Of a stretch of 64,000 nucleotides of DNA, positions 12,730-62,866 are shown one piece after another. This stretch comes from Setoptus koraiensis (Eukaryota; Animalia; Arthropoda), in NCBI GenBank assembly GCA_048013815.1, contig CM106586.1:11532001-11596000 (forward strand), written 5' to 3'. The translations under genes and the position numbers were made by a program. The notes under the pieces were generated by a model. The model was not told the DNA's origin. It did not search any database and saw only the letters and a program-made list of their open reading frames with translations. Every line of letters starts with the position of its first letter. The stretch's first letter is position 1.

Positions 12730-13335
12730 TTAACTACCGCGGTAATATATCGGTTTGTATTTGCATTGGAGGTCGGAATCAATGTCGTTGAATTGATCAA
12801 CCATTTCAAAGCTCTTTGGCTCCGACTCAGTAAACACCTCGTTTTTGAGCAATTCTCTCGGAAGTATTGTCAAGTGAGCACCTCGACAGTATTGGACAGT
12901 TTTGAGCCAGCGTCTGACTACCTGGCTACTCTTCAATTTGTTGTCTGTAACATGGTAATTGTCTCCGGCCGTGAAACCACGGCTAGCCAGCAACTCCATA
13001 GGAAAGATTGAGCTTTGAGCGTAACTTTCAATCAACTTGCAAGATCGCTTTAGACTCAGAAAAATTTCAATCTCTTCTTCGGTATCCAGAGGAATGGGGC
13101 TGCTCCAGCAGTCACCCTCCAACTTAGTTGTTGGAATGAGGTTCTCTGGTAGATCAACTTTCGATGGGTCGAAACATCGATTGACCGTTAAACGAACACT
13201 TTGATCGTTTTCCACGACGTCCAAGCTTTGTATAACAGCTTCGTCTGATTGTTCTGCTTGCTCTAGTTTTGTTTCTAGGTTTCTTTTGCAGATTAAAATA
13301 ACCTGGCCGAGTATCTTTGAAATCAGTCCGTGCAA
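12730..13335 (-). CDS. Unknown protein or decayed gene; 201-aa open segment without a clear ATG
   Basis: Protein-like composition (coiled-coil segment, PIPLDTEEEIEIF). An in-frame TAG or acceptor lies just upstream, and stop-interrupted protein-like frames continue down to about 12170. Confidence 0.4.
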   Translation of the reverse strand: MHGLISKILGQVILICKRNLETKLEQAEQSDEAVIQSLDVVENDQSVRLTVNRCFDPSKVDLPENLIPTTKLEGDCWSSPIPLDTEEEIEIFLSLKRSCKLIESYAQSSIFPMELLASRGFTAGDNYHVTDNKLKSSQVVRRWLKTVQYCRGAHLTILPRELLKNEVFTESEPKSFEMVDQFNDIDSDLQCKYKPIYYRGS

Positions 13336-13501
13336 TTCATGGTCCTTCTTTGTTCTGTCAGAAATGGGCTACAGTTCCAAGCCAAGTTTGTAACAGCATC
13401 TCAGATTGATATTTGTTTGAGACATGCCAGCTCTTTTAGACGATACCCAATGACTGTGTACATGATTGATTTTCAGCGCTTAATTTTAATTATTAGCGCT
13501 T

Positions 13502-13505
<4 letters not shown>

Positions 13506-13576
<71 letters not shown>

Positions 13577-13626
13577 AGCGCAAATAAACTGAATCAAATA
13601 CAACTTTCAGACTCGTTTACTATTTG

Positions 13627-13667
<41 letters not shown>

Positions 13668-13672
13668 TCTCT
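13506..13672. repeat. Two (CT)n microsatellites (13506-13575 and 13627-13672)
   Basis: Long CT runs. The counterparts in copy 2 (about 18309-18334 and 18387-18399) are much shorter. Confidence 0.9.
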
Positions 13673-13811
13673 GTCCCTGTTGCTCAGCATAGTATTTAAT
13701 TACCACCAGCAGTCAGTGGTGATTGCAAAAATTTATTCAGCGAATCACTGTTGTGTGGCACTCGGAGATTGGCTAGATCACAATAGTTCATAGTTTTTGA
13801 AAAACGGCGCA

Positions 13812-14723
13812 ATGCTCTTGAAGTCGTTGTTACCGATCGCTGTGGTGGGTTTTCTGGCGACTGACTATGTCTACGTGTACGCCAATTTCCACGAACCGGG
13901 AGAAATATCCGGCCATCGTAACGGATATTCACGAGGAGGCAGAAAACGGCCAAATGGGCAACCAAGACAACAAATTGAATGCGGTGTAAATAAATTTGGT
14001 AGAACCAGAATAACGAATGGCCAACCAGCAGAGCCCGACTTCTATCCGTGGATGGCACGCCTTCCCGATCCCGGTTGTGGAGGATCCATTGTGAATGAAT
14101 ATTTTATTCTGACAGCGGCACATTGTGTTACTGGGGATAGGCCCAAAAGAGTGATTGTTGGTGACAATGATCAGTCACAAGTCGACCCAACTGAAAGAAG
14201 TTACGAGATAGATTGGACAATCCCGCATCCTTCTTACTCGAAACATGAAAATGATATTGCCCTGGTGAAATTAACTGAACCAATCGAATGGAGCGATTCG
14301 ATCCGGCCAATCTGTTTGCCGACAAGAGACACGAATCTTGAGCCAGGAGCAAATCTGACAATCATAGGTTTTGGCGAATTACGGTCTCCGGACAAGCCTA
14401 CGTATCCAGATGTGCTGCAAGTTGCCCACGTTCCTCTTGTTTCCGAAGAAGAATGCGCCCATGCTTGGAATTATGAAGGCGAGGTAAGGTACTTTGCAGA
14501 AGAAATGATCTGCCTCGGCGAACATGATGAAAATGGCATGCTGAAGTCTTCCGCCTGCTATGGCGACTCAGGTGGACCGGCCATGATACCGCTAAATAAT
14601 CGCTGGGCACAAATTGGCATAGCTAGTTTTACACGAAAAGGATGTAAACTAAAATACTCCGTTTACACAAGATTGACCCATTATCTCGATTGGATTGAAA
14701 GTATCATTAATGCGCATGGGTAA
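13812..14723 (+). CDS. Secreted S1A serine protease, intronless (copy A)
   Basis: ATG 13812 with signal peptide; activation site GRTR/ITNG; catalytic triad TAAHC, NDIAL, GDSGGP; PICLP. Confidence 0.93.
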   Translation: MLLKSLLPIAVVGFLATDYVYVYANFHEPGEISGHRNGYSRGGRKRPNGQPRQQIECGVNKFGRTRITNGQPAEPDFYPWMARLPDPGCGGSIVNEYFILTAAHCVTGDRPKRVIVGDNDQSQVDPTERSYEIDWTIPHPSYSKHENDIALVKLTEPIEWSDSIRPICLPTRDTNLEPGANLTIIGFGELRSPDKPTYPDVLQVAHVPLVSEEECAHAWNYEGEVRYFAEEMICLGEHDENGMLKSSACYGDSGGPAMIPLNNRWAQIGIASFTRKGCKLKYSVYTRLTHYLDWIESIINAHG

Positions 14724-15070
14724 GAAGCGGGGCAAAAGTAGGAGGAGACAACCAAGTAGATGAAAACGACAAAATACAGGAAGTCAGCCGGGTGCGGAGC
14801 TGACATGAAGAATAAATTCTAGTCGACAGCGATAACGGAACGTGCGTGTTACTTTGTCCGTGTTGAGATTGCGTGTTTTCTTCGTTCTTGTGTGTATTGG
14901 GGTTCTTCTTTTGTTTCTGGAGTTTAACTGTGCGAGTTCATCAGGAAATCAAGCCTGAACAATATTCGAAATATTATTACCTGAGCATATTTGGGATGTT
15001 TTCAATGCCAAACGATCAAATGTCGACTGTGAATTTTGCATGTTCGAGGTGAGAGCGACGTTTGTCTTGC

Positions 15071-15131
15071 GTAACAAAAAGGAGGTTTGGAGCAAGACTT
15101 GGTTGACTTGCTCCAAACCTTCTTATGTTAT
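15071..15131 (+). other. ~60-nt hairpin (duplicate at 19819-19879)
   Basis: aggtttggagcaag (15083-15096) pairs perfectly with cttgctccaaacct (15107-15120). The stem extends through a G-U pair and a bulge to about 24 bp. Confidence 0.7.
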
Positions 15132-15471
15132 AGCAGTGCTGATTATGACGAGTCCACAAGGCTTATTTCAGATGTTTTAGCGATGAGTGCCCTGGTTAGA
15201 TTTTGGTGAAACTCCAGTGGTTCGCAAGTGCGGAAAAGTCCGGTTCCGGTTTTACAAAAAGCTGCCGTCGATGAGGCTCGAGCAACAAAAATCAAGCAAC
15301 TCAAAGAATTACACTTCTTGGAGATGATGTTGCTCCACAAAGAGTTTATTGTGTTGATTGTAAGAATGTTGATTGAAATATGCTACATAGATTAAATTTA
15401 TTTCTATCTTTTTATTGTGACACATTGCGATCAGAATGTCCGACGCAGTCGAGTTAATGATGACGGCGACC

Positions 15472-15799
15472 TCAGCCGGAGATGGTTTTTGTAATCCAAT
15501 CTCGGTAATATATCAAGTCACTGGATACTGTGGCCCATGCTTTTCTTTTGATATTGACACACTTCTTTGGACCGAACGACACCGTTCCGAATAGATACCA
15601 GCGATCATCTTTGGGATCTAAACAAGCCATAGGTCCCCCTGAGTCGCCCTGGATTTCGGTGCAGCAGTCGAAGTTTAAATTGATAACAATTTGTTCTTAA
15701 AATACAGTATGTAGTTCTCAAATGAAATTCCTTGTAAAACGTAAACAAAAATCTCAAACCTACCATACATACTGCTCCCATGACCCTTGTACCTGGTCC
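15472..15799 (-). pseudogene. Orphan 3' exons of the minus-strand protease carried in duplication copy 1
   Basis: Last exon 15472-15648 (GDSGGPMACL...WITKTISG*) and the last 36 nt of the preceding exon (15764-15799), offset exactly 4748 bp from the intact gene. Everything upstream is absent. Confidence 0.88.
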
Positions 15800-16007
15800 G
15801 GACTTCTATCCCGGTTGTGGAGGATCCATTTTGAATGAATATTTATTCTGACAGCGGCACATTGTATTGACAGAAACACCGACCGAGTAATTCTTGGTGG
15901 CCATAGTCAAGACAAATTCGACCCAACTGAAAGAATTTACCCAGTAAAGGAGATATTCGTGCATCCTCCTTATGAAGGGAATACGAATAAGAATGATATT
16001 GCCCTGG
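15798..16007 (+). pseudogene. Fragment of a third intronless protease variant
   Basis: PDFY..CGGSILNEY..TAAHCIDRNTDRVILG..NDIAL. Carries a 24-nt deletion between ATCC repeats and a 1-nt frameshift (gaatatttattc versus gaatattttattc). Confidence 0.88.
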
Positions 16008-17334
16008 GAAGTCTACACTGGTAGACTGTTTAGTTGGCAAGAAACGACGCGGATTGAGCGGCAAGACCGAGGTTATTTTTCACGATGGCGTCAAGCGCGA
16101 TCTCAAGATAGTGATAATACCCCAAGTGGATCATTTAATGAACACGCTCACTGTCACAGAGTCGTTGATGTTTGCGTCAAAATTAAAAAATTCCCACAAG
16201 CACGATTTTGATCATTTCAAAAATGTTCAACGCGTTATAGAGCAACTAAATCTGACTGTTTGCTCCAAGCAATATTGCAGCAAATTAAGCGGTGGCCAGT
16301 ATAAAAGAGTAAGCATCGGACAGGAGCTTCTATCAAATCCTGACATTATGATTTTAGATGAGCCCACTTCCGGTTTGGACGCCGTCACCTGTTATAATAC
16401 TGTCATGGCGTTGAGAGATTTGATTAAATCTAATCCACAACCGATGGAAAATTTGGGATACATGTTCTTTCAGATTTATGTTATAGTATTCGCGGCCGTT
16501 TGTGTAACATCGCTCACGTTTCCATTGGCCGTTCATGTGCTATTGAAAGAATACAGAAATGGCTGGTACAATTTGTCGTCGTATTTCGTTGGTCGAACAT
16601 TGGCCGATTTGCCAATGCCAACATTCAATGTTGTGCTAGCGATGGCAATATCATATCATTTAACCGGCCAGGCTGAATCTTATTACAATTGGCGATTCTT
16701 TTCCGTTGCAATTCTAGTGGTGCTGGCCACACTGATCGCCCAGACTCAGGGCCTCATGTTTGGAGCCTACCTAATGAATGCAGTTCAATCGGCAGTGTTT
16801 GTGGCACCGGCCTCAACTGCACCTCTGGTTGTTGTGAGCGGATTCTTGCTGCGAACCAATAGTTTGCCCTTCATATTGCAAGTGTTTGGCAAATTGTCTT
16901 ATTTCACTTATGTGCTCAATGGGTTCATTGTGAGCCGTTACGGATTTGGCAGATGCCAGTGCGAGGATGAGATGTTTGGGGTGCAACAGGATCACGTATT
17001 GCCGCAAAATTCCAAGGCCATCATCAGTATCTGGTTGGACACATTCAAACAGGACTATGCGCAACAACAAAATAACTCCACGGCGCTTGTCGCGCCAACG
17101 AATGAAACCGATTCCATGGATCTGGTGGACAAATTGAGCAGATCACTGGAACAGGCGAGAAATTTCGGATTTAACATAACTTCTTGCGATCAATTGAAAC
17201 CCTTCCCAATGTTGGATTACGAGCTCAACGACTCAGATTTGACGCTATGCTTCGTTGCGTTAATCGTTATGCTACTAGTTTTCAGGGTGCTCGCTTTTAT
17301 GTCGCTGTCGTGGATGATACGTATTTCGGTGTAG
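16006..17334 (+). pseudogene. ABCG half-transporter fragment, 5'-truncated with a large in-frame internal deletion
   Basis: Begins at GKST (end of Walker A), then LSGGQ and ILDEPTSGLD. It jumps from SNPQPM directly to ENLGYMFF, so the H-loop (IHQP) and first TM helix are absent relative to the ABCG at 54646-56895. AATAAA at 17392. Confidence 0.85.
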
Positions 17335-17427
17335 TAGCGTCGCTTGTTATTATACAACATTGTTACAATCACATGCTAGTTTCTTCATTGAAATAAATTG
17401 CACAATTGCCACAAATCGAAGAGCTTC

Positions 17428-17841
17428 TCATTGATCTATTCGCCTAACGCTGCGGGGCACGTAGGCCAAAGTGAGGGATTTACAAATGCTGAACTTTCCT
17501 CTTATCGGGTGCATTTCGCCCAAAATTGAGCAGAGAAGCGAACTTTTATTGCTTGCGATCTGCCTGACAATGGCGACAAAAGATCCCTCGGGTATGCGAA
17601 AGTTGATATCTTTCAATATTGGCTGCAGGCCTATTTCTTTGTCCACTACGCGATCCGTCCAAGAAGTGCTGGCATTCTCTATTTGGATTGCATAATTACT
17701 TTCTTCGCGGCTGACATACGTCACCAATTCTTTGTTGTTGAGAAACTTGCTCAGGCGATTAACCGATACTGATGCCGTAATGAGATTGGTTATTGTCTCG
17801 GGCAAGTTCGTCAGTGGCAGCCTCAGCAAATTAAACAACAA
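17428..17841 (-). pseudogene. ABCC/MRP-family fragment (end of TMD1 to start of NBD1)
   Basis: LFNLLRLPL..SVSVNRLSKFL..ILKDINFRIPEGSFVAIV..KSSLLCSILGEM..AYVP is MRP-like. Walker A is degraded to RQIASNKS. No flanking ABCC sequence. Confidence 0.85.
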
Positions 17842-17859
17842 TATTGAGACTTGGTGTCC

Positions 17860-18080
17860 CCTTAGTCAGTGGACTAAGGCGGGGAGATCGTAGGTCGGGG
17901 AGGTTCTATCGATTTTCTACTCCCCTGTTCTCCCTCACTCTCCCAAATCTCCAGAAAACTAAAGAAAAAGAAAAATTTCAGCTGACGAGAAAAAAAGTGT
18001 GACCAATATCGTGACAAATATCGTGACATTTCTCGTTATTAAAGTTTAAAAGATCTACGATCGTAACCTCCCTACGATCT
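17860..18080. mobile_element. Short non-autonomous element with sub-terminal inverted repeats and terminal stem-loop (Helentron/DINE-like or MITE)
   Basis: Hairpin ccttagtc-agtg-gactaagg (17860-17879); agatcgtagg..gaggtt (17885-17905) inverted relative to aacctccctacgatct (18065-18080); 12-bp tandem repeat gtgacc/aaatatc (about 17999-18027); palindrome tacgatcgta (18056-18065). Confidence 0.45.
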
Positions 18081-18160
18081 AACAAAGGCCTTCTCAGAGG
18101 TTAGCACATGGCCAGACTCACCACCACTGAACACATCTAATGCAAACGAGCCAATCGCGA

Positions 18161-20547
18161 TCAGAAATGGGCTACAGTTCCAAGCCAAGTTTGTAACAGC
18201 ATCTCAGATTGATATTTGTTTGAGACATGCCAGCTCTTTTAGACGATACCCAATGACTGTGTACATGATTGATTTTCAGCGCTTAATTTTAATTATTAGC
18301 ACTTAAAATCTCTCTCTCTCTCTCTCTCTCTCTCGAGCGCAAATAAACTGAATCAAATACAACTTTCAGACTCGTTTACTATTTGCTCTCTCTCTCTCTG
18401 TCCCTGTTGCTCAGCATAGTATTTAATTACCACCAACAGTCAGTGGTGATTGCAAAAATTTATTCTGCGAATCACTGTTGTGTGGCACTCGAAGACTGGC
18501 TAGATCACAATAGTTCATAGTTTTTGAAAAACGTCGCAATGCTCTTGAAGTCGTTGTTACCGCTCGCTGTGGTGGGTTTTCTGGCGACTGACTATGTCTA
18601 CGTGTACGCCAATTTCCACGAACCGGGAGAAATATCCGGCCATCGTAACGGATATTCACGAGGAGGCAGAAAACGGCCCAATGGGCAACCAAGACAACAA
18701 ATTGAATGCGGTGTAAATAAATTTGGTAGAACCAGAATAACGAATGGCCAACCAGCAGAGCCGGACTTCTATCCGTGGATGGCACGCCTTCCCGACTGTG
18801 GAGGATCCATTTTGAATGAATATTTTATTCTGACAGCGGCACATTGTATTGATGAAGAGACCGACCGAGTAATTCTTGGTGACCATAGTCGAGACAAATA
18901 CGACCCAACTGAAAGAATTTACGAGGTAGAGGAGAAATTCGTGCATCCTCTTTATCATGACCTTCCTACTAGAAATGATATTGCCCTGGTGAAATTAACC
19001 AAACCAATTGAATGGACTGATTCGATCAGGCCAATCTGTTTGCCGACTAGAGACATCAATCTTGAGCCAGGAGCAAATCTGACTATCATAGGTTTTGGCG
19101 CAATAGAAACCACTGGCACCTCTTCGGACATGGATACGCTTCCAGATGTGCTGCAAGTTGCCGATGTTCCTCTTGTTTCCGTAGAAGAATGCGCCCATGC
19201 TTGGAATCCCTTTCCTGAAAGTGACATTTTACAAAGGTACTTTGCAGAAGAAATGATCTGCCTCGGCGAACATGATGAAAATGGCATGATGAAGTCTTCC
19301 GCTTGCTATGGCGACTCAGGTGGACCGGCCATGATACCGCTAAATCATCGCTGGGCACAAATTGGCATAGCTAGTTTTACAGGAATAGGATGTAAACTAA
19401 AATACACCGTTTACACAAGATTGACCCATTATCTCGATTGGATTGAAAGTATCATTAATTCGCATGGGTAAGAAGCGAGGCACAAGTAAGAGGAGACAAC
19501 CAAGTAGATGAAACCGACAAAGTACAGGAAGTCAGCCGGATGCGGAGCGGACATGAAGAATAAATTCTAGTCGACAGCGATAACGGGACGTGCGTGTTAC
19601 TTTGTCCGTGTTGAGATTGCGTGTTTTCTTCGTTCTTGTGTGTATTGGGGTTCTTCTTTTGTTTCTGGAGTTTAACTGTGCGAGTTCATCAGGAAATCAA
19701 GCCTGAACAATATTCGAAATATTATTACCTGAACATATTTGGGATGTTTTCAATGCCAAACGATCAAATGTCGACTGTGAATTTTGCATGTTCGAGGTGA
19801 GAGCGACGTTTGTCTTGCGTAACAAAAAGGAGGTTTGGAGCAAGACTTGGTTGACTTGCTCCAAACCTTCTTATGTTATAGCAGTGCTGATTATGACGAG
19901 TCCACGAGGCTTATTTCAGATGTTTTAGCGATGAGTGCTCTGGTTAGATTTTGGTGAAACTCCAGTGGTTCGCAAGTGCGGAAAAGTCCGGTTCCGGTTT
20001 TACAAAAAGCTGCCGTCGATGAGGCTCGAGCAACAAAAATCAAGCAACTCAAAGAATTACACTTCTTGGAGCTGATGTTGCTCCACAAAGAGTTTATTGT
20101 GTTGATTGTAAGAATGTTGATTGAAATATGCTACATAGATTAAAATTATTTCTATCTTTTTATTGTGACACATTGCGATCAGAATGTCCGACGCAGTCGA
20201 GTTAATGATGACGGCGACCTCAGCCGGAGATGGTTTTTGTGATCCAATCTCGGTAATATATCAAGTCACTGGATACTGTGGCCCATGCTTTTCTTTTGAT
20301 ATTGACACACTTCTTTGGACCGAACGACACCGTTCCGAATAGATACCAGCGATCATCTTTGGGATCTAAACAAGCCATAGGTCCCCCTGAGTCGCCCTGG
20401 ATTTCGGTGCAGCAGTAGAAGTTTAAATTGATAACAATTTGTTCTCAAAATACAGTATGTAGTTCTCAAATGAAATTCCTTGTAAAACGTAAACAAAAAT
20501 CTCAAACCTACCATACATACTGCTCCCATGACCCTTGTACCTGGTCC
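18161..20547 (+). repeat. Direct segmental duplication, copy 2 (~2.39 kb)
   Basis: Collinear with 13358-15799. Its right end continues into the intact minus-strand protease gene. Confidence 0.95.
18539..19471 (+). CDS. Secreted S1A serine protease, intronless (copy B)
   Basis: Same signal peptide and propeptide as copy A; triad TAAHC, NDIAL, GDSGGP. Confidence 0.93.
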   Translation: MLLKSLLPLAVVGFLATDYVYVYANFHEPGEISGHRNGYSRGGRKRPNGQPRQQIECGVNKFGRTRITNGQPAEPDFYPWMARLPDCGGSILNEYFILTAAHCIDEETDRVILGDHSRDKYDPTERIYEVEEKFVHPLYHDLPTRNDIALVKLTKPIEWTDSIRPICLPTRDINLEPGANLTIIGFGAIETTGTSSDMDTLPDVLQVADVPLVSVEECAHAWNPFPESDILQRYFAEEMICLGEHDENGMMKSSACYGDSGGPAMIPLNHRWAQIGIASFTGIGCKLKYTVYTRLTHYLDWIESIINSHG

Positions 20548-22445
20548 ACTATAAGGTGTTATGCAAATGTTTCCATGGTCATTCAAACGAACGCTTGCGT
20601 CTTCACCTTTGTTGCAAACATCTGGCTCGGAGACAACTACTCTCAGTTCTTTTAATTGTTTCGAAGTTTTATCATGCTCGGCTGGAATGATTGAAGAATT
20701 TTAAATTGTCTGTAGTTATTAGAGACTCGAAAAGATCATTCAAAATTGTCATCATTTTTATCTATATTCAACTCATTTATAATTTGCTTATGATGATACT
20801 TACTTCTGCCTGGAATTTTATTTTTCATTGATCATATCGAAATTGAATTGGTTTGAAAGATTACATATTCGACATCGAGTACAAAAAAAAAAATAGTATT
20901 TGTTGATTTTGTACGTGCAATCTATTGATTGATACCAATAGTGGTGAAACTATGACTTACCCCAACCGGTTTGGTAGCAAACTTTGTCTTTTGTATGGGA
21001 GTAAGCATCAATATCAGCGTTCGGCAAACATATTGGGTGAATTTCATCAGTGAATGGTACCTTCCGGTCGAGCTTGATTAATGCTAAATCATCACTCAAT
21101 TGTTCGTATGAAAACTTAGGATGCACAACATATTTGGTTGCGTTGTAAACTTTGTCGGGTCCATATTTTTTTGTGAAATCCAGAACACCCAAATAGGAGA
21201 TCACGCCACGCCTGAATGGTCAGACATATCGCACAATTACTATCATTGAGCTCTATAAATGAGATCTCCTATATGTTATGGATGGAGAAAGCTAGTAAAA
21301 CTCACTTGTGAGGCTTCGCCTGAAAGCAATGAGCAGCGGTTATTACCCAGCGGTCATTGAGTAGTGCCCCATTACATAGGAGACTTGAACCTGTTTCTGT
21401 CCTGATTGAAATCTTAGTCTAACATATTACAGGGCGAATAAAAAAGGGACGAAGTTTCCTTTGAGCATATGATCTTTCCAATTTCTTGTTCGTTTTGTGC
21501 CAATGTAACAAGGCGAGGTCAATTTGCCCAAATGTAAGTTATTATATAGAACATTTTTGATCATTCATAGCCTACTAGTGCATCAGAATTTCAACTTGTT
21601 ATTTGATCACACATCGAACGACCGAAATAGGCCAACCATCAGAGAGGTTCGAGATTCGAATTATCATAAAAAGAATTTTCACACCCTACGGAACGCATAC
21701 AATGTAGAAATTTTATGACGCGCAAATTTTTCTGTGCATTTGTATCGCCGTTTCCTAGCTGTTTTACGTGAAGCATGCATGCAAATGAAGTTTCGCAAAT
21801 GATCAAGAATGTCCACTATAATATTTACATCTGGTTAGTTATTTACTCACTGCCCAGGGCCAATAACTAAATAATTAAAGAGAAAATAATAATAGAGAAG
21901 AAAAAATGAAAGACGAGATATTTTAATGACACCAAGTTGTTTGATCAGCATCTTTTTATCCACAGTGGGTCCGTATCGTTTGCTCGAAAGTCTGTTGCTC
22001 GACATGGCAGTGTTTAATTATGGTGATCCATCTATTGAGCGTCACAGTTAGATATTACTTACTGTTTAGAATATAAGCCGAAGACTATTCTAGAATGTTT
22101 GTCTTGAGGATTAGATATCTTCCTGATCCCACAATGTTTATCATTGCTATACATTGAGTTCTTTGGTTTTCCATCGGATTCCACTGTAACATTTTCTTTG
22201 AAGATATTATCTAAATCCCCCAGACTAATTGGTGATCTACTGATATCTTTAAAGATCTTATTTTCCACCTTAGCAATCAAATCGGCCTTGTCTTGGGCCT
22301 CTGTTCTGACAGTAAAGAGGTGAAGCAGTAAGAGGAGCGATCCCAGCAAACATGTCCGAAGATGTGCCCAATTGTGTATCAATTTAATTTTTCCGAAATG
22401 ACGCATTTTCACAATTGTTCTGGCAAGAAAACACGCCTCGGACAT
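20220..22445 (-). CDS. Secreted S1A serine protease, 7 exons: 22445(or 22406)-22063, 21866-21851, 21418-21306, 21211-20961, 20809-20804, 20681-20512, 20396-20220
   Basis: The spliced product reads HSR/IVFG..HYWPWATKI..LCNGALLNDRWVITAAHC..DDLALIKL..PICLP..TGWGRTEH..GAVCMGDSGGP..WITKTISG*. All junctions are GT-AG and in phase. Confidence 0.9.
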
Positions 22446-23828
22446 GATATCCAACTGTCTGCGTATTCTATTGGAGTAATTGATGTATTCAAAATGAAAA
22501 CCATTAATCGATCTGTTGATCCTCGAGTGCCCTTATTTCATAGTAATAGAGCGAGGATTGAAATACAGATAAATATCAGACAGCAACTGAGTGCTGTCTT
22601 TATTAGAACTGCCGAATTAATAGCTCTAACGATCAAAAGTTTATTAATCAAAAACCATGTCATATGATATGCGTCTATGGTAGAAAACGATTTGCAGCGC
22701 ACTTGATTCATTTTTCTACAGACATGGTGGCCATTCGATTCATGAACGGTTGCTTCTGACTAGGGAATGAATTAAAAAAATCGTCCGCGAACTTCAGAAA
22801 TACTCACAATCTATGATCAGGATAACCTTTCGGGAAATCATTGTAGTAGAGACTGCCATTTTTTTGCTGACTGGGATGATTTCTTTTTCTCAACTGAAAC
22901 CGTGGCTTTTACAATTTTCTTGCCTTCGATTCACGACAATGGATAATTTCAATCATTTTAATCGTGATATTATGTGAAAATTCTTAGTAATTGTCCGTAA
23001 AGGCTTTTGTTCATTCGAATGAGAGAAAGATGGCATCGATTGTGACGGTTTGACTGAAACTGCGTGTAGGCACGCTCAATCGGGATAAAACTCTCGCTTC
23101 CAACATTCAACTACCTTCGAAGTCGTATGTATGAATATTTCGATTTTTTATCTGGATCATGGTTTGATTGAATAAGAATTGACTAGACCAATGATTTTTA
23201 TTGGTACAGTCTATTGAAACAGACCAATGAGCGGCAAGTTGAAATATGAAGTGTCCGAACAAAGTCAAGAAAAAATCAAAGTTCAGAATGCAATTGGTTC
23301 TACTAGAGGGTGGTCGAATGGAAAAACAAAAAACTCTAGCGGACTTCATAGGTCTTCTTCGTGTGTCGTGTTAACGAGTATTCCTGCATTTGTAATTGAA
23401 TTGAAACCCAATTTGCCGCCTAATCAATAGGTATCTCCCGTCGGGGTCTATGAAAATTTTGAGCATTGACGTCAGACTAAACTTAGCACATCTCTCTCCA
23501 TGTCTCAAATCCTTAAAAAAAATATCTCTACTATCAATAGTGCACGAAACAACACAATTAAATCTGCTGATATGCTAATGAGCATATTGTAAGTATTTTC
23601 ATTTTCAAACGATCTAGTTCAAACGATTGATATTTAATCCGATGAATCGTTCTCTATAACATACAGTGTCATACATTGAATATGTTCAATTGTCTTATTT
23701 GGTCCTGCTTGTCCAGAATCAGTTCTAATTCCATGGTGGGATTTACGATCATATCAAGCAGAATCTCCCCTAGCTTGTGACTTAAGCAGTACAAAATCTA
23801 ACTGTTGAATGCTGGAGCAATGGTTGCA

Positions 23829-33955: not shown

Positions 33956-36900
33956 TGGTGTTGTCAATGCGTGTTGTTGGTCTATGAAATATAAGTAACG
34001 TGTGCAGCAGGTAGTAATTGAGATGTATTAGCAGTAGCAGTATATTTGGCTACTACTGCTGCACTTGCTAGAACAACAAGTGCAAAAGGTGATGCTTGGG
34101 TGCGTGGCAAAGAACGGACAGGGTACGGGAACGACAATAGTGGGAATTGTGGGTCGGCGGGGTGAATAGTGGGTACAGTCGGGATGAAATACCTTAGTTG
34201 CTTACCTGTAGACTCGACAAGGTAGTTTGTTGGTTTGCTGCGACACCAGTTGCTTGAGCGTTGCTTGTGGCACCATAATTAATTGAAATTGATGGCAGTA
34301 GCAGAGGTGGCGGCGTTGTGGCCAGTTGCTTGGTCTCAACTAGCGTCGTAGTGGTTTGTTGTGTCGCAATTGGAGCGACTGCAGCCGTTTGAAACGTTTG
34401 CGACCGAGCCAATTGATTGCCCATTTGATTAGAATTGGATGCCATTGATATTTGATTGGCTGCACCATTTGTCGTAGACGTGGTTGAGCTAGATGATGCT
34501 TGCTGTACACCTCCAGTCTGCTGACTTGATTGAACAGATGATACAGACGTCTGGCCAGAGGATAATTGACCAGAGGAAGCTGCAACGGAAACAACCGATG
34601 GCTGTTGTGCGCTCATTGCGGAGTTCGTAGTAGATGTGATTGATGCAGAGGACCTCTTCGCGCCAGATGATGCGCCTTTGGATGAGGCCACAATGGTTGC
34701 GAAATTTGATCCCTGTTGTTGTCCACTCTGAGCTGCCGTCGAGATTGTTGTTGATGATGCCTGTTGGACCCGGGAAGAGGGCTTACGCAATTGAGCTTGC
34801 GTGCTCAACTGCCGAAAACCCATCTGGGCCCCATTTGTTGTCTGAGTGGACACGGAACTAGATTGCTGCTGTTGATTGGTGCGCACATTATTGTTTTGTT
34901 GGTTCTGAACTATTGTCTGGACTGTATTAGTTTTTGGGCCTACAACTGAGACACCCGACTGACTATTGGTGGTCTGCAAATTTTGTGCCAGACCGTTCTG
35001 TTGTTTCATTTGATTGGAAGTGGAACTCACAGAGGAAGTGACTCCTTGTTTACCTGGATCGGACTGGATAGACATGAAACTTGAGGACAAATTATCTGAC
35101 GAACCTGCCGCTGGCATTGCCAGTGCTGTTGCTGCCGGTGCTGGTGCCACTACCGGTGCTGGCGCCACCGGTGCTGGTGCCGGCGCTAATATTGCAGGTG
35201 TTGGTGCCGCTACCGCTGCAGGTGCAGGTGCCGCTACCGCTGCTGGCGCTGGCGCCACCGGTGCTGGTGCCGGTGCTGGTATTGTAGGTACTGGTGCCGC
35301 TACCGCTGCAGGTGCCGGTGCCGGTGCCGCTACTGCTGCTGGCGCCGGTGCTGGTATTGCAGGCGCTGGTGCCGGTGCTGGTGCCGCTTCCGCTGCAGGT
35401 GCAGGTGCCGCTACCGCTGCTGGCGCTACCGCTGCTGGCGCCACCGGTGCTGGTGCCGGTGCTGGTATTGCCGGTGCTGGTGCCGCTACTGGTGCTGGCG
35501 CTGGCGCCGGTGCTGGTATTGCAGGCGCTGGTGCCGGTGCTGGTGCTGGTGCCGCTACCGGTGCTGGCGCCGGCGCTGATATTGCAGGTGCTGGTGCCGC
35601 TACCGCTACCGCTGCTGGCGCTGGCGCCACCGGTGCTGGTGCCGGTGCTGGTGCTGGTACTGTAGGTACTGGTGCCGCTACCGGTGCAGGTGCCGGTGCA
35701 GGTGCCGGTGCTGCCATGGATGTGGCAGTGGACGATTGTTGCGATACTAATTCGGAGGACTGGTCGCCCACATCAACGCCTGTTGATTGTTGCGAGACTG
35801 ACACTAAACTTGAATCGTTTTCCGCGTAGTCGTCGCTCGCAGCGTAACTTGAGCTTGATAGACTGGAAGACGATTGTTTTTCACCCACACCAGTTTGGCT
35901 CGTCGAAGAGGCTGCCGACAATTGATTAACATTTGAATTTTGTTTCATCATTGAATTGACGGAAGAAATCTGTGCCCGAGCTACTTTTTTGGGTTTTTGA
36001 TGCGACGCCGAGATGGATTGTTGTTGCATAACGGAAGTTCTGGCACCAATATTAGCAATATTACTAGTGGTGGTAGTGGCTCTCATAGATTGTGTTTTTT
36101 GTTGGATTGGATTCAACTGTAATATTATGGTTGGCATCAACGGATTCTGTGGTGACAATAGTTGTTGGCTAGAAGAGGACGTAAATCGAGCACCAGAAAC
36201 AGAGCCTTGCTGCTCTGTGGTGACACTAGATGCGCTCGATTGACCTGAGCCACTTGCCGATGTTGCTAGTGATGATGATTCCGCTCCTGAAGACGAGCCC
36301 GATACAACAGAGGACGACGTTGTTATAGCGGGTGGTGGCGGCGGAGCGGAAGTTTTTATTTGCGCACTACTAACTGAGGCTTGTGATCTGTTATTCACGT
36401 TTGATGTGGAAATAACAGCCGAACTAGCCTGTTGCTGTTGTTGCTGATTGTTGCTTACGGCAGCACTGGTAACCTGTTGATTTGTGTTGGCTCCGGCTTG
36501 TTGTTTACTAACAATGTTGCTAGTGGATGATTGAGAATTTGACGTTGCTTGCTGTTGGGCTCCGCTTAAAGAATTTATCTGAGTTTGAGTGGACGACGAT
36601 ACAGCTTGCTGTGGCTGCGGCTGTGGATTACTTGCCAGTGACGTTGAGCTCACTTGGGCGATCTGCTGCTGAGGTCCAGACGACGGCATTACAGGGGCCG
36701 GAGGGGCTTGCTGTTGGGACGCCACGGAGGCAGAGGAAGCTTGCTGTTGGGGACCTAATGAAGACGTTGTTGTCTGGCTGGTCACAGTGGATGTACTTTG
36801 CTGCACAGGCGGCTGAACATTCCAGCCACCGCTTGGCACAAAATCGCTCTTTTGTGGCACTAAGGTCCAACCACCGGACACGGGCTTACAAGGTGGTGGA

Positions 36901-39900
36901 CCAGAAGGTGGCTCACCTGATGTCGAAGGCTGCAGTGTAAAACCGGGCGGACAAGGGGGTACATTTTTCGTTTGAATGGGCGAAATCATTGTCTCGGGTG
37001 CTACAGTGGTAGTGCTAGGTGGCGCAATTGAATCGGGTGCTTTAATTATAAAGGCCTCTAATTTTTTTAAAATATCAGGCGACAGTTCAAGAATGCTCTG
37101 CAGTTGACTCAGTCCACCGTATAAATTAGTCAATTGCGGTTTCAATGCAGAATATGGACTTTGTGTGGTGGTTTTAGGTGCCTTTGTTGTGGTAGTAGTT
37201 GTTGTTGTTGTAGTGGTAGTAGATGTTGTTGTTGTAGAAGTCTTAGGTGCGTCTTCACAATCACATTTGTGACCAGGTGAACCGTGAGTAGAATTGTCCA
37301 ATTGGAAAGGCTTCAATGTTGTGCCAAGTTTGCGCAAATCATCTAAACCGCTCCTTGAGGCACCCGGGCCGGTCCCGTTCGGAGCCCGGTTGGCTGATGG
37401 TGCACCTGATGTCCCTTTGATCGGTCCAGTGGTGGGCGCATTTGTTGGTGCAATAGCTGGTGCCATTGTTGTCACGGCTGGACTCGGTGCTGGAGTCTGC
37501 ACAGGAACGGGTGCAATGGTTGTTAGTACGGGTGCAGGGGTCGGTGCAATAGTTGTTGGTACGGGTACAGGGGTCGGTGCAATAGTTGTTGGTACGGGTG
37601 CAGGGGCCGGTTTGACAGTTGTTAGTACTGGTGCAGGGGCCGGAGCAATAGTTGTCGGCACTGGTGCCGGGGCCGGTTTAACAGTTGTTGGTGCCGGGGC
37701 CGGTGCGACGGGAGGCGGATTCGCTGGTTTGCTCGCTGGTGGATTGGCGGGGCCCTTGGAGGGTTTGGAGGGGCCACCTCCAGATCCGGCCGCTGCGGCA
37801 CTGGCAGCCGAACTTGGTGGTCTGCTGGGAGGTCCATTCATCGATCCAGATCCACCCGCAGCACTCGCGGCTGCACTTGCGGACCCATTCGGACCGGCTG
37901 CAGCAGCGGCTGCACTTGCTGCACCTCCGGAACCGTCTACGGCTGTAGCGGCCGCCGCTGCACCAGCCGGTTGGCCTGCAGAGGCACTTGCTGCCGCTGA
38001 ACTGGAACCAGGTCTAATCGCACCAGGCGCGGAGGCTGCACCGGAAGCTGGGCCCGAGGCAGAGGCAGAAGCTGCACCGGAAGCTGGGCCCGAGGCAGAG
38101 GCAGAAGCTGCACCGGAAGCTGGGCCCGAGGCAGCGGCAGAGGCTGCACCGGAAGCCGGGCCCGAGGCAGCGGCAGAGGCTGCACCGGATTTAGGGGCTG
38201 CATCACTTGTTTGCATTACCATAGTTCCCCCGGTGCCGCTGGACATCATTGCAACAGTGCCTTGACCTTTCCTGGTCTCTTGCTCTTTGGCAACAAGTAT
38301 GCTGGCCAGAAGATTGGCCTCTTTGCTACGCCCGGCGAGCAGATTGAACAGTGGACTATCTGGTTTTATAGAATCCTTCAATATATTCCCAGGGCTCGCA
38401 ACTTTCGCTGGTGCCTCTGTGGTGTCGCTGTCGTTGTCACTTGCATCGTCCTCTGTTTCTGCTGGAGCGGGTGTCTCTTCTTCTTGAGTATTTTTCGTCT
38501 CCATTAACTGTTTCAGCATCTGAGTGAGCTGTGCCATCGTATCCAGCGATGATGAATTTGATGACGGTGCAATTGCTACTGCGCTAGGCTGTTTAGAAGT
38601 GCCAGATGCTGGTGCCGCTGGTGGTGCACCTGGAGCTCCAGTTGCTGTACCAGCGGCACCAGAGCTAGAACTAGATGGTGCCGACGGGGTTGCTTGTGCT
38701 ACCGCTGGTGCTCCGGGTGCCGGCGCGATGGCAATGGCGCCCGGAGTAGCCGCAACGGAGGAATGTGATGGTGTTCCAGGGGAACCAGACGGAGAAGCAA
38801 CGGCTACTGCACCCGGTGTGGCCGAAACTGCCGTATGGGGAGGAGGTGCTGCTGGTGCTGGTGCTGGTGCTGGTGCTGGTGCTGGTGCTGGTGCTGGTGC
38901 TGGTGCTGGGGCTGCTACAGCTGCTGCAGGAGGGGCTGGTGGTGGTGCGGTTGCTGGTGGTGCAGGAGGCGCTGGTGCTGGCGGAGCCGCAGGTGCGGCC
39001 GCTGGTGCGGCCGCTGGGGCTGGTGCAGGAGGCGCTGGTGCTGGTGCGGCAGCTGGTGCGGCCGCTGGGGCTGGTGCAGGAGGCGCTGGCGCTGGTGCGG
39101 CCGCTGCTGGCGGAGCCGCAGGTGCCTCAGGGGCCGCTGGTGCTGGTGCGGCTGCTGGGGCTGCTGCAGGAGGCGCTGGTGCTGGTGCAGGAGGCGCTGG
39201 TGCTGGTGCGGCCGCTGCTGGCGGAGCCGCAGGTGCCTTAGGGGCCGTTGGTGCAGGAGGTGCTGGTGCGGCCGCTGCTGGCGGTGCAGGAGGCGCTGGT
39301 GCTGGAGGCGCTGGCGCTGGTGCGGCCGCTGCTGGCGGAGCCGCAGGTGCCTTAGGGGCCGTTGGTGCAGGAAGTGCTGGTGCGGCCGCTGCTGGCGGTG
39401 CAGGAGGCGCTGGTGCTGGAGGCGCTGGCGCTGGTGCGGCCGCTGCTGGCGGAGCCGCAGGTGCCTTAGGGGCCGTTGGTGCAGGAGGTGCTGGTGCGGC
39501 CGCTGGGGCTGGTGCAGGAGGCGCTGGTGCTGGTGCTGGTGCAGGAGGCGCTGGTGCTGGTGCGGCCGCTGCTGGCGGTGCAGGAGGCGCTGGTGCTGGA
39601 GGTGCTGGCGCTGGCGCTGGTGCGGCCGCTGCTGGCGGAGCCGCAGGTGCCTTAGGGGCCGTTGGTGCAGGAGGTGCTGGTGCGGCCGCTGCTGGCGGAG
39701 CCGCAGGTGCCTTAGGGGCCGCTGGTGCTGGTGCTGGTGCGGCCGCTGGTGCGGCCGCTGGGGCTGGTGCAGGAGGCGCTGGTGCTGGTGCGGCCGCTGC
39801 TGGCGGAGCCGCAGGTGCCTTAGGGGCCGCTGGTGCAGGAGGCGCTGGTGCTGGAGGCGCCGGTGCTGGTGCTGGTGCGGCTGGTGGCGGACCTGCTGCT

Positions 39901-61054: not shown

Positions 61055-62866
61055 ATGGCATCATCGGAGGGTGACCCAAGAAAGTCAGTCAGCCTAAAAA
61101 CCGTATTAGCAATCAAAGAGGCAGCAGTTAAAAAAGCAGCAGCTAAAAGTAGATCGTTAGCTGATCCAGGTCCTCTAGACCCCGGTGCTATACCAAGTGA
61201 GATACCTGAACGTGTTGAGGTACCACCTCCACCCACAAGTTCCCAACTTATTATGCCAGCTAGCACGGGCGGATCGCAAACTAAAGCATCAAGCATCTCG
61301 CCCGAAGATTCAACGGGTCCGGGTGTTGGATCACCGGCTAGCGGCACTCTGGCCAGCGCCGGCGCCGGGCCCGCTGAAGGAAGTGAATTTGCCCCCAATC
61401 CAACCTCGGCAGGCGGTGCGTCCAGTGCAGCTCCATCTAGCGCCACTGCATCAGGCGCCCCCGCATCTGGCGGTGGTCCGTCAAGCGCCGCTCCCATGAG
61501 TGGTGCCGGTGCATCGGGTGCCGTTAGCTCGAAAGCGGGTGCCTCAAGCGCGGCTCCCATGAGCGGTGGCGGATCGAAAGCCGGTGCTTCAAGTGCCGCC
61601 CCAATGAGCGGTGGCGGATCGAAAGCCGGTGCTTCAAGTGCCGCCCCAATGAGCGGTGGCGGATCGAAAGCCGGTGCTTCAAGTGCCGCCCCAATGAGCG
61701 GTGGCGGATCGAAAGCCGGTGCGTCAAGTGCTGCCCCAATGAGCGGCGCGGGATCGAAAGCCGGTGCTTCAAGTGCTGCCCCAATGAGCGGTGGCGGATC
61801 GAAAGCCGGTGCGTCAAGTGCCGCCCCAATGAGCGGTGCCGGATCAAAATTCGGTGGCTCAAGCGCCGCTCCTATGAGCGGTGGCGGATCTAAAGCAGGT
61901 GCCTCAAGTGCCGCCCCGATGAGCGCTGCCGGATCTAAAGCAGGTGCCTCGAGCGCCGCTGGGTCGAGCCCGGGTGGCTCCGAGCCGGAGGACGAGCCAT
62001 ATAAATCAAAGTCTAAAATGAGAGCCTCGGATATGAACGCAAACAGCAACATAGGTAGCGTAAAGGAAGACGGCGCGAGTAAAGGGGCCAGCTCGAAAGC
62101 GGCCAGCTCTGCGGCACCGACATCCGAGGGCGGCAGCGTGCCCAAATCAGCATCCAGCCCGAAGGACACCGCATCAGAGGATGGTGGTGCGCCAGCGTCC
62201 AGCCCGATGGAGGCCAGCTCTGGTGCGGCGTCGCCGGCCAGCTCCAAACCGGCCAGCTCTAAGCCGGCGTCGGAAGAGACTGACGAAGAACCGGCGAGCC
62301 CCGACGAGCCTGCATCGCCCGAATCTAGTGGCAAGGGGTCGAGCGGCTTGGGATCGAGCGCCAAAGGATCGAGCAGCAAGGCATCTAGCTCGGCGCAGAA
62401 GAAAAAAGATGGCAAAAAGAAGAGAATTACCCGCTACAGATATCACAAGCGTATCACAGTGCGAACATCGGGCAAGGGCAGCGGAAAATCGGCGGCCATA
62501 TTGAAGAAGGTGAACAATCAGGAGGGCCCGGTGACGCCGTCAACAATTGATCAATTAGATCCTGATGTCATAATGGAGAGAGCGGGCATTAAGGGCAAAA
62601 AGAACGCCAGGTGGCGTGTTAGAATGCGCCAAACAAAAAGAACAACCAAAAATGGCAAAACTGTCACACAAACCAAGGTGGCCTATCGTGATAGCGATGG
62701 CAAAAAACAGGTCAAGCTCACCAACGATCCTACCTGCAAGAAATGCAACAAAAAAATTGAACACTGTAAATGTGACACATTGTCGGGCATAGCGTCGGCC
62801 ACAAGCAATATCAAGTCGTCTAGCTCTAAGGGCCCCAAATCGGGCACGTCAGAGGAAAAGGAATGA
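61055..62866 (+). CDS. 603-aa Ser/Ala/Gly-rich repeat protein with basic C-terminal domain ending in CxxC..HCxC
   Basis: Continuous ATG-to-TGA ORF; in-frame 45-bp repeats; non-repetitive, Lys/Arg-rich structured-looking tail. No signal peptide. Confidence 0.75.
   Translation: MASSEGDPRKSVSLKTVLAIKEAAVKKAAAKSRSLADPGPLDPGAIPSEIPERVEVPPPPTSSQLIMPASTGGSQTKASSISPEDSTGPGVGSPASGTLASAGAGPAEGSEFAPNPTSAGGASSAAPSSATASGAPASGGGPSSAAPMSGAGASGAVSSKAGASSAAPMSGGGSKAGASSAAPMSGGGSKAGASSAAPMSGGGSKAGASSAAPMSGGGSKAGASSAAPMSGAGSKAGASSAAPMSGGGSKAGASSAAPMSGAGSKFGGSSAAPMSGGGSKAGASSAAPMSAAGSKAGASSAAGSSPGGSEPEDEPYKSKSKMRASDMNANSNIGSVKEDGASKGASSKAASSAAPTSEGGSVPKSASSPKDTASEDGGAPASSPMEASSGAASPASSKPASSKPASEETDEEPASPDEPASPESSGKGSSGLGSSAKGSSSKASSSAQKKKDGKKKRITRYRYHKRITVRTSGKGSGKSAAILKKVNNQEGPVTPSTIDQLDPDVIMERAGIKGKKNARWRVRMRQTKRTTKNGKTVTQTKVAYRDSDGKKQVKLTNDPTCKKCNKKIEHCKCDTLSGIASATSNIKSSSSKGPKSGTSEEKE
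61529..61960 (+). repeat. 45-bp coding tandem repeat, about 9.6 copies (SKAGASSAAPMSGGG)
   Basis: Units start every 45 bp from 61529 to 61934. Confidence 0.93.

What the first reader, a model, noticed from the sequence alone, without database searches (positions are those of the whole stretch)
14040..19420. Twin proteases with near-identical flanks but swapped substrate-binding loops, plus a third mosaic variant
Seen: the 1,076 bp after the stops differ by only about 16 substitutions (manual count), and the signal/propeptide differ by about 3. The mature domains differ in blocks: CVTGDRPK vs CIDEETD; DNDQSQV vs DHSRDKY; IDWTIPHPSYSKHE vs VEEKFVHPLYHDLPTR; ELRSPDKPTY vs AIETTGTSSDMDTL; YEGEV vs PFPESDILQ; TRKG vs TGIG. 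The fragment at 15798-16007 shares PG with copy A and ILNEY/CID/TDRVILG with copy B, and has its own loops. Established: these positions correspond to the 60s, 70-80, 99, 140s, 170s and 220s loops contacted by substrates and protein inhibitors. Inference: loop-restricted diversification, by segmental gene conversion among paralogs/pseudogenes or strong positive selection, possibly to escape host protease inhibitors.
Basis: partly seen in the sequence, partly recalled or inferred. Interest (0 to 1): 0.82.

Follow-up and report, generated by a model that had tools for sequence, protein, structure and literature searches.

The report
Twin mite proteases with reshuffled specificity loops
Two neighbouring copies of a secreted digestive-type protease gene in a mite sit in nearly identical DNA but differ sharply in the loops that choose what the enzyme cuts, a well-known way for protease families to diversify, so it is a tidy new example, not a new phenomenon.

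Summary
A 2.4-kb direct duplication (13358-15799 and 18161-20547) carries two intact, intronless S1 protease genes: A (13812-14723, 303 aa) and B (18539-19471, 310 aa). The 1,076 bp after the stops differ by exactly 16 substitutions, and the signal and propeptide by 3.

- **Loops:** aligned to chymotrypsinogen, every variable block falls in a canonical loop (37, 60, 70-80, 99, autolysis, 170s, 220s). 31 of 70 loop residues differ against 17 of 164 elsewhere (p=2e-8). All 13 indel residues lie in loops.
- **Silent sites (new):** silent divergence is also uneven. It is 5.3% in the gene body (13701-14840), peaking at 9.4% in the N-terminal half of the mature domain, against 0.73% in the far flanks (p=2e-8). 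Positive selection after a young duplication cannot explain this, so the gene bodies have an older or foreign history, which implies interlocus gene conversion. Its direction is unresolved.
- **Selection:** loop replacement runs about 3.3 times the non-loop silent rate (p=9e-4). This suggests diversifying selection, but two sequences cannot prove it.
- **Fragment 15800-16012:** it is a broken B-type paralog with its own 60- and 99-loops, not a clear mosaic.
- **Inhibitor escape:** untested.

No close relatives exist in public databases. This scan also noted the same stretch separately (s1-367061).

Verdict: new member of a known kind.

The parts
13358..15799 (+). Duplication unit A (2.44 kb)
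   Evidence: Aligns with 18161-20547. Far flanks are 0.4-0.8% diverged.
18161..20547 (+). Duplication unit B. Its right end lies in an intron of the complete minus-strand protease gene D.
13812..14723 (+). Protease A coding sequence: 303 aa, intronless. It has an N-terminal hydrophobic signal-like helix, a propeptide with Cys57 and activation site R66/I67. The triad is H104/D148/S253. S1 residues are Ser189/Thr216/Ser226 in chymotrypsin numbering.
   Evidence: ORF. Pfam PF00089 at 179.7 bits. Alignment to 1acb_E. AlphaFold2 model with pLDDT 83.6. Foldseek TM to target up to 0.89.
18539..19471 (+). Protease B coding sequence: 310 aa, intronless, same triad and cysteines as A. S1 residues are Ser189/Thr216/Thr226.
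13701..14840 (+). Gene-body tract of raised silent divergence in unit A (partner 18428-19588 in B). It roughly matches the inferred transcription unit: TATA-like TATTTAA at 13693, Inr-like TCAGTG at 13713, AATAAA at 14811.
   Evidence: 26 of 493 silent sites differ against 9 of 1226 in the far flanks, p=2e-8. The boundary-free scan gave 14036-14801, reached by 0 of 1000 permutations. Motifs were read.
14036..14500 (+). Core of the divergent tract, the N-terminal two thirds of the mature domain. It holds the 37-, 60-, 70-80, 99-, autolysis and 170s loops.
   Evidence: 17% nucleotide divergence. Silent divergence is 11 of 117, 9.4%. All 13 indel codons lie here, within loops defined beforehand.
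14127..14147 (+). 60-loop (c59-64): VTGDRPK in A, ID-EETD in B.
14208..14249 (+). Strand c85-90 plus the 99-loop: IDWTIPHPSYSK--HE in A, VEEKFVHPLYHDLPTR in B.
14373..14408 (+). Autolysis loop (c142-152). B is 4 residues longer.
14472..14486 (+). 170s loop: YEGEV in A, PFPESDILQ in B.
14634..14660 (+). 220s loop, c217-218 (RK in A, GI in B), and S1-pocket residue c226 (Ser in A, Thr in B).
15800..16012 (+). Fragment C, a broken B-type paralog covering about codons 76-150. Its 5' end is truncated. It has a 24-nt in-frame deletion and a 1-nt deletion near 15843 that shifts the frame. Homology ends just after the NDIAL motif. Its 60- and 99-loop sequences are its own.
15469..15648 (-). Orphan copy of the last exon of minus-strand S1 protease gene D, carried along in unit A. 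The functional exon is at 20217-20396.
15800..18160 (.). 2.36-kb filler between the units. It contains fragment C, an ABCG fragment ORF (16054-17334, +) and an ABCC NBD1-like fragment (17428-17841, -).
   Evidence: Junctions are visible.

Best explanation
A and B are two functional paralogous genes for secreted, zymogen-type, elastase/chymotrypsin-like S1 proteases. They lie in a young 2.4-kb segmental duplication whose far flanks are about 0.7% diverged.

The gene body of one copy does not share that young history. Most likely, interlocus (ectopic) gene conversion from a more diverged family member elsewhere in the genome overwrote it, in one or a few tracts. Homology between that donor and the recipient is limited to the gene itself.

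The imported body differs from the resident one mainly in the surface loops that form the S4-S3' subsites. Those loops evolve faster than silent sites in this family, while the beta-barrel scaffold is conserved.

The outcome is two enzymes with the same upstream DNA, signal peptide, propeptide and activation site. They are therefore probably co-expressed and co-activated, but have different extended substrate specificity and probably different sensitivity to canonical inhibitors.

Shown: the duplication, the intact genes, the loop mapping and the uneven silent divergence. Inferred: the direction and donor of conversion, secretion, specificity and any link to inhibitors.
For: - **Duplication and flank identity:**
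- **Intact S1 proteases:** both have the catalytic triad, three conserved disulfides, the R/I activation site and the chymotrypsin fold.
- **Silent divergence along the unit:** upstream non-coding as a whole 1.6% (split: far upstream 0.4%, proximal upstream 4.5%); signal and propeptide 1.2%; mature N-terminal half 9.4%; C-terminal coding 1.5%; 3'UTR 6.8%; downstream 0.8%.
- **Body against far flanks:** 26 of 493 against 9 of 1226, p=2e-8.
- **Synonymous sites in the conserved core of the tract:** 8 of 62 against 22 of 1454 in the non-coding flanks, p=1.4e-5.
- **Boundary-free scan:** reached by 0 of 1000 permutations.
- **Fragment C:** within the tract it groups with B (88% identity) and not with A (76%), so A's tract is the outlier lineage although the A and B flanks are near-identical.
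- **Scaffold against loops:** non-loop omega is about 0.5 (0.2 outside the observed blocks), while loop pN is 0.384 against non-loop pS of 0.148, p=9e-4.
- **Indels:** all are in-frame and lie in loops.
- **Filler:** the 426-codon open ABCG fragment is easier to reconcile with a young junction (inference).
Against: - No donor paralog can be shown, because only this window is available. Public databases hold nothing above about 42% identity.
- Divergence inside the body is patchy: low in the signal/propeptide and C-terminal coding parts. One simple tract from one donor is therefore not enough without further assumptions.
- Silent-site counts are small. For example, C-terminal coding 1 of 67 against the tract's 11 of 117 gives p=0.058.
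- A first scan that allowed very small windows was not significant: 100 of 300 permutations reached it.
- Formal dN/dS on two sequences does not exceed 1 significantly when loop dS is used.
- Expression, secretion and enzymatic specificity are untested.
Confidence: 0.5

Rival explanations
1. The duplication is old, with homogenised flanks. The 2.4-kb unit duplicated long ago (about 9% silent divergence), and repeated conversion between the two tandem copies keeps the flanks alike. Selection against conversion preserves a peak of divergence over the functionally differentiated loops. [quoted passage not shown]
For: The same uneven silent divergence fits this model. The copies are only 4.7 kb apart, which favours frequent exchange. 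This signature is described for the opsin and RH genes (PMC3924837, read). Islands of divergence despite conversion are reported in a crustacean (PMC3728101, abstract).
Against: Divergence does not fall off smoothly from the loops. The signal/propeptide (1.2%) and C-terminal coding (1.5%) parts are low, while the 5'UTR (4.5%) and 3'UTR (6.8%) are high. At least four separate homogenising tracts would be needed. The orphan gene-D exon and the open 426-codon ABCG fragment at the junction look young.
Confidence: 0.3
2. Positive selection alone explains the pattern. A recent duplication was followed by rapid adaptive substitution and indels confined to the loops, with no exchange with other paralogs.
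For: Replacement changes and every indel are concentrated in the specificity loops. In the C-terminal part, 6 of 7 changes are non-synonymous and include c217, c218 and c226. That rate, 6 of 185, exceeds the young silent rate, p=0.027.
Against: Selection on amino acids does not raise synonymous or UTR divergence. Silent sites in the conserved core of the tract and in the 3'UTR are 7-12 times more diverged than the far flanks. In the tract, fragment C is nearer to B than A is.
Confidence: 0.04
3. Assembly artefact. A and B are two divergent haplotypes (alleles) of one locus that were placed in tandem by mistake.
For: Flank divergence of about 0.7-1.5% is within the range of heterozygosity. No read data were available to check.
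Against: There are no N gaps. The units are separated by 2.36 kb of unique, complex sequence. The sequence outside the units does not continue to match on either side. Unit A ends inside an intron of gene D, and only B has the rest of that gene.
Confidence: 0.07
4. One copy is decaying. After duplication, relaxed constraint let one copy drift towards a pseudogene, and loops simply tolerate change best.
For: Whole-gene omega is about 0.93. Loop omega within the loops is close to 1.3.
Against: Both reading frames are intact and all 13 indel codons are in-frame. The triad, the cysteines and the activation site are conserved. Scaffold omega is 0.2-0.5. Drift cannot produce the silent-site excess.
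Confidence: 0.05

Closest known systems
Rodent tissue-kallikrein (Klk1b/Klk1c) tandem subfamilies
   Same: They are tandemly duplicated S1 proteases. Positively selected sites lie on the face around the active site, and gene conversion among paralogs has been tested for and debated (PMC3114847). That paper's reference list cites Wines et al. [quoted passage not shown]
   Different: The kallikreins are multi-exon mammalian genes with trypsin-like Asp189. Many paralogs are available, so site models could be run. Here there are two intronless mite genes with Ser189/Thr216/Ser-or-Thr226, plus one fragment.
Reproductive-tract S1 protease radiations in Drosophila arizonae and Anopheles gambiae
   Same: These are lineage-specific duplications of secreted S1 proteases. 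Positive selection clusters near the triad and at specificity determinants such as residue 216 (PMC1959364; PMC3068966, listed).
   Different: Expression site and selective agent (sexual conflict) are known there and unknown here. No near-identical flank with a divergent body was described in the passages I read.
Peak of divergence between duplicates that undergo gene conversion (opsins, RHD/RHCE; the Innan and Teshima-Innan models)
   Same: Flanks are kept alike while a short functional segment stays diverged. That is the pattern seen here (PMC3924837).
   Different: Those cases are documented with population and outgroup data. Here the direction of exchange is unresolved and the profile is patchy rather than a single peak.
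Mite S1 protease families (house-dust-mite group 3/6/9 allergens; scabies-mite inactive protease paralogs)
   Same: They are expanded families of secreted S1 proteases in acariform mites. This comparison rests on my own knowledge. A 'mite allergen Der p 3-like' protein was among the distant hits.
   Different: Identity is only about 30%. The scabies paralogs have lost the catalytic triad, whereas A and B keep it.

Membership tests
Peptidase family S1 (chymotrypsin fold, clan PA) | Match to the Trypsin domain profile above the curated cut-off | tested here: met
   PF00089 scores 179.7 bits for A and 164 bits for B, against a cut-off of 20.6.
Peptidase family S1 (chymotrypsin fold, clan PA) | Catalytic triad His57/Asp102/Ser195 in conserved motifs | tested here: met
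   H104, D148 and S253 of A align with H57, D102 and S195 of chymotrypsinogen. D148 and S253 are invariant, and H104 nearly so, among 43 homologues. B has the same motifs.
Peptidase family S1 (chymotrypsin fold, clan PA) | Two-beta-barrel chymotrypsin fold | tested here: met
   In the AlphaFold2 model most of the protease domain has pLDDT above 90. Foldseek gives E=1e-22 and TM to target up to 0.89 against enteropeptidase, prostasin and chymotrypsin.
Peptidase family S1 (chymotrypsin fold, clan PA) | Zymogen activation site (Arg15/Ile16) and proteolytic activity | tested here: inconclusive
   R66/I67 align with R15/I16. Cleavage and activity cannot be tested with these tools.
Elastase/chymotrypsin-like (not trypsin-like) S1 specificity | Residue 189 is not Asp, and residues 216 and 226 narrow the pocket | tested here: met
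   Ser189, Thr216 and Ser226 (A) or Thr226 (B), from the 1acb_E alignment. The predicted P1 preference is an inference from textbook determinants.
CLIP-domain serine proteases | N-terminal clip domain (PF12032) | tested here: not met
   Neither A nor B matches PF12032. The N-terminal 66 residues are a hydrophobic helix followed by a low-confidence linker.
Paralogs shaped by interlocus gene conversion | Significant unevenness of silent-site divergence along the duplicated unit | tested here: met
   5.3% against 0.73%, p=2e-8. The scan was reached by 0 of 1000 permutations.
Paralogs shaped by interlocus gene conversion | An identified donor, or conflicting trees between segments | tested here: inconclusive
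   Fragment C groups with B inside the tract while A and B are near-identical in the flanks. No full-length third paralog is available.
Positively selected protease loops | dN/dS significantly above 1 at loop codons under a codon model with several sequences | tested here: inconclusive
   Loop pN of 0.384 against non-loop pS of 0.148, p=9e-4. Within the loops alone omega is about 1.3. In the A/B/C overlap omega is 1.1-1.45 and not significant. Site models need more paralogs.

The most novel reading that the evidence does not exclude
The divergent tract coincides, within the resolution of the data, with the inferred transcription unit: Inr-like TCAGTG at about 13713 through to just past AATAAA at 14811. 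The tract could therefore have been written in by recombination with a cDNA made from a paralog's mRNA. That is the reverse-transcriptase-mediated mechanism proposed for the massive intron loss in eriophyoid mites (PMC7738191), here acting between paralogs. If so, this locus would be a footprint of RNA-mediated interparalog gene conversion in an animal germline.
Probability: 0.1. Interest if true: 0.65.

Novelty: new member of a known kind. Interest (0 to 1): 0.35.

Why it matters
If both enzymes are made, the mite has two co-regulated proteases with the same activation switch but different substrate-binding surfaces. That is a compact illustration of how protease repertoires widen. The silent-site result shows that paralog exchange, and not point mutation alone, supplied the variation, so genome-wide dN/dS scans of such families would be misled here. 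If the animal is a plant-feeding eriophyoid, as earlier notes of this scan say (not checked here), the pair is a reasonable candidate for digestive or salivary adaptation to plant protease inhibitors. Nothing in this window tests that idea.

Tried and rejected
- **Search for family members.** The word-indexed protein search with A gave at best 38% identity. The exhaustive HMMER search of 1.84 billion representatives gave at best about 42%. The scan's own index, searched by sequence, was blank. GENECONV/RDP and site models were therefore not possible.
- **First breakpoint scan.** This was a max chi-squared scan that allowed windows of 10 or more silent sites. It picked a 12-site window and was not significant, with 100 of 300 permutations reaching it. 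A slow re-run timed out. A likelihood-ratio scan with at least 40 sites gave 14036-14801, reached by 0 of 1000.
- **NG86 dN/dS over the A/B/C overlap.** Omega was 1.08 for B-C, 1.45 for A-B and 0.83 for A-C, none significant. The apparent 'one synonymous against sixteen replaced codons' between B and C does not survive path averaging.
- **Ideas rejected.** A clip-domain protease. A catalytically dead paralog. A mosaic origin for fragment C. A gap-type assembly join (no N).
- **Organism identity.** The ABCG fragment gave only 35-44% hits, with trombidiform and oribatid mites among the few named sources.


Full report
**What is there.**
- The window is eukaryotic. Earlier notes of this scan call the organism a mite and a plant-feeding eriophyoid. 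I could not verify either.
- A self-comparison finds one long direct repeat, 13358-15799 against 18161-20547. A global alignment shows sharp ends on both sides.
- Each unit holds one uninterrupted ORF with a full Trypsin domain (PF00089: 179.7 and 164 bits). A is 13812-14723 (303 aa) and B is 18539-19471 (310 aa).
- Each unit also carries, on the minus strand, a copy of the last exon of a different, multi-exon S1 protease, gene D. D is complete only to the right of B.
- The 2.36 kb between the units is a patchwork: a broken protease fragment C (15800-16012), an open 426-codon ABCG fragment lacking the start of its ATPase domain (16054-17334), and a minus-strand fragment resembling the start of an ABCC ATPase domain (17428-17841).
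- Unit A keeps the left-hand context and unit B the right-hand context. The layout is therefore a tandem duplication with filler at the junction.
- About 2 nt are shared at the 15799/15800 and 18160/18161 joins (read). That is weak evidence for a microhomology-mediated event.

- The 1,076 bp after the stop codons differ by exactly 16 substitutions with no indel.
- The signal, propeptide and N-terminal coding part differs by 3.
- The central 14059-14500 differs at 74 of 433 aligned sites, with six gap events.
- All six quoted block pairs are in the alignment.

**The proteins.**
- Aligned to bovine chymotrypsinogen A, whose residue index is the standard numbering (1acb_E), A has R66/I67 at the activation site.
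- The triad is H104/D148/S253, matching His57/Asp102/Ser195.
- Cysteines align with the 42-58, 168-182 and 191-220 pairs.
- C168 sits at position 122 and probably pairs with propeptide C57 (inference).
- The S1 pocket reads Ser189, Thr216 and Ser226 in A or Thr226 in B. These are elastase/chymotrypsin-like enzymes, not trypsin-like ones (inference from textbook determinants).
- An AlphaFold2 model built on 43 homologues has pLDDT above 90 over most of the protease domain and an N-terminal hydrophobic helix.
- Foldseek finds the chymotrypsin fold with TM to target up to 0.89.
- There is no clip domain.

**Where the differences fall.** I defined the loops beforehand from the canonical numbering: 34-41, 59-64, 70-80, 93-100, 142-152, 169-178, 185-188 and 217-225.
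- 31 of 70 aligned loop residues differ, against 17 of 164 elsewhere (odds ratio 6.9, p=2e-8).
- All 13 indel residues are in loops.
- The variable blocks are coil in the model, except c85-90, which is a strand.
The 70-80 loop is also more an exosite than a direct substrate contact (my own knowledge).
- The mature enzymes differ in net charge (about -14.6 against -20.5 at pH 7). Examples are RK against GI at c217-218 and VTGDRPK against IDEETD in the 60-loop.

**The silent sites.** If a young duplication had merely been followed by selection on the loops, synonymous and untranslated sites in the gene should be as alike as the flanks. They are not.

| Segment (A coordinates) | Silent or non-coding divergence |
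|---|---|
| 13358-13700 | 0.4% |
| 13701-13811 (proximal upstream/5'UTR) | 4.5% |
| Signal and propeptide | 1.2% |
| 14036-14500 | 9.4% (11 of 117) |
| C-terminal coding | 1.5% (1 of 67) |
| 3'UTR up to just past AATAAA at 14811 | 6.8% (8 of 117) |
| 14841-15799 | 0.8% |

- Gene body against far flanks is 26 of 493 against 9 of 1226, p=2e-8.
- Synonymous differences inside the conserved core of the tract are 8 of 62, against 22 of 1454 in the non-coding flanks, p=1.4e-5.
- A scan without preset boundaries picks 14036-14801 and is reached by none of 1000 permutations.
- An earlier version that allowed tiny windows was not significant.
- The gene bodies therefore have an older coalescence than the DNA around them. 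That requires exchange with other copies: interlocus gene conversion or a template switch.

**Which way did the exchange go?** There are two readings.
- (1) Young duplication plus ectopic conversion. The 2.4-kb unit duplicated recently (about 0.7%). The body of one copy was then overwritten from a more diverged family member, whose homology with the recipient is limited to the gene. That would explain why the tract roughly matches the transcription unit.
- (2) Old duplication with homogenised flanks. Conversion between the two copies keeps the flanks alike, and selection protects the differentiated segment. This is the 'peak of divergence' signature reviewed in PMC3924837.
- I lean to (1) for three reasons. 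The profile is not a single peak: low signal/propeptide and C-terminal segments sit between high UTRs and the high N-terminal half. The orphan gene-D exon and the still-open 426-codon ABCG fragment at the junction look young. And in the tract, fragment C groups with B (88% identity) while A is the outlier (76-77%).
- None of this is decisive without the other paralogs. Public databases hold nothing closer than about 42% identity.

**Selection on the loops.**
- Within the tract the scaffold is constrained: omega is 0.2 outside the observed blocks and about 0.5 outside the loops defined beforehand.
- Loop replacement divergence (pN 0.384) exceeds non-loop silent divergence (pS 0.148; p=9e-4; omega about 3.3). 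It also exceeds non-loop pN (0.079; p=1e-11).
- Against this, NG86 restricted to loop codons gives about 1.3, because multi-hit codons inflate the synonymous count. Loop alignment around indels is uncertain.
- The overlap with fragment C gives omega of 1.1-1.45, not significant.
- In the C-terminal part, 6 of 7 changes are replacements. Three are at c217, c218 and c226, and the rate exceeds the young silent rate (p=0.027).
- Together this points to diversifying selection on specificity surfaces, but it is not proof.

**Fragment C.**
- It starts at codon 76, directly at the end of unit A.
- Relative to an A-like PDPG state it carries an exact 24-nt in-frame deletion between two short repeats.
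- It also has a 1-nt deletion in a T run near 15843, and it loses homology just after the NDIAL motif.
- It matches B alone at 33 sites and A alone at 8 scattered sites. Only the PG codon pair is adjacent among those 8.
- PG is most simply the ancestral state that B lost. So C is a B-type paralog remnant with its own 60- and 99-loop sequences, not a demonstrable mosaic.
- It does add a third instance of 'same scaffold, different loops'.

**Comparison with what is known.**
- Tandem S1 protease families with rapidly evolving active-site surroundings are well documented: rodent kallikreins (PMC3114847), and Drosophila and Anopheles reproductive-tract proteases (PMC1959364; PMC3068966).
- Mosaic divergence of tandem paralogs under conversion is an established topic (PMC3924837; PMC3728101; bioRxiv 10.1101/2025.10.29.685298, listed).
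- This locus is a clean new example in a mite, not a new kind of system.
- The least ordinary reading the data allow is that the tract was written in from a paralog's cDNA, since it is roughly transcript-shaped. Reverse-transcriptase-mediated recombination has been proposed for intron loss in eriophyoids (PMC7738191). I give that about 10%.

**Limits.** There were no reads, no transcripts and no other paralogs. The counts of silent differences are small. Secretion, activation, specificity and any relation to host inhibitors are inferences.

Noticed in passing
window 16054-17334 (+): A 426-codon open reading frame encodes the C-terminal part of an ABC ATPase domain (PF00005 positions 59-137 only) plus an ABC-2 membrane domain. 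It is an ABCG half-transporter without its Walker A region and is intronless. The best public hits are 35-44% identical. It is surprisingly intact for a truncated fragment sitting in junction filler.
   Followed up: partly
window 17428-17841 (-): A 137-aa ORF resembles the junction between the first membrane domain and the first ATPase domain of an ABCC transporter, judged by eye. The expected Walker A position reads RQIASNKSS. It has no Pfam hit at E<=0.001 and is probably a dead fragment.
   Followed up: no
window 13506-13575 and 13627-13680 (partners near 18309-18334 and 18386-18399): Two (CT)n microsatellites lie upstream of the protease genes. They are 44 and 32 nt longer in unit A than in unit B. 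These are the only indels in the non-coding flanks.
   Followed up: no
window 20217-22454 (-): Gene D is a multi-exon S1 protease, with exons around 20217-20396, 20950-21204 and 21290-21376, and a candidate N-terminal exon at 22059-22454. Only its last exon and part of the adjoining intron were copied into unit A (15469-15799).
   Followed up: partly
window 15799/15800 and 18160/18161: Both outer joins of the filler share about 2 nt with the sequence they replace (CC and TC). This is compatible with microhomology-mediated joining or template switching, but it is weak evidence.
   Followed up: no
window 34000-40000; 61529-61960: A G+C-rich stretch (up to 68% G+C) has a strong positive G-over-C and negative A-over-T skew. 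It contains many imperfect internal repeats (35100-35715, 38840-39970). A separate array with a 45-nt period lies at 61529-61960.
   Followed up: no
window 12730-13335 (-): A 201-aa ORF lies immediately left of unit A and has no Pfam match.
   Followed up: no
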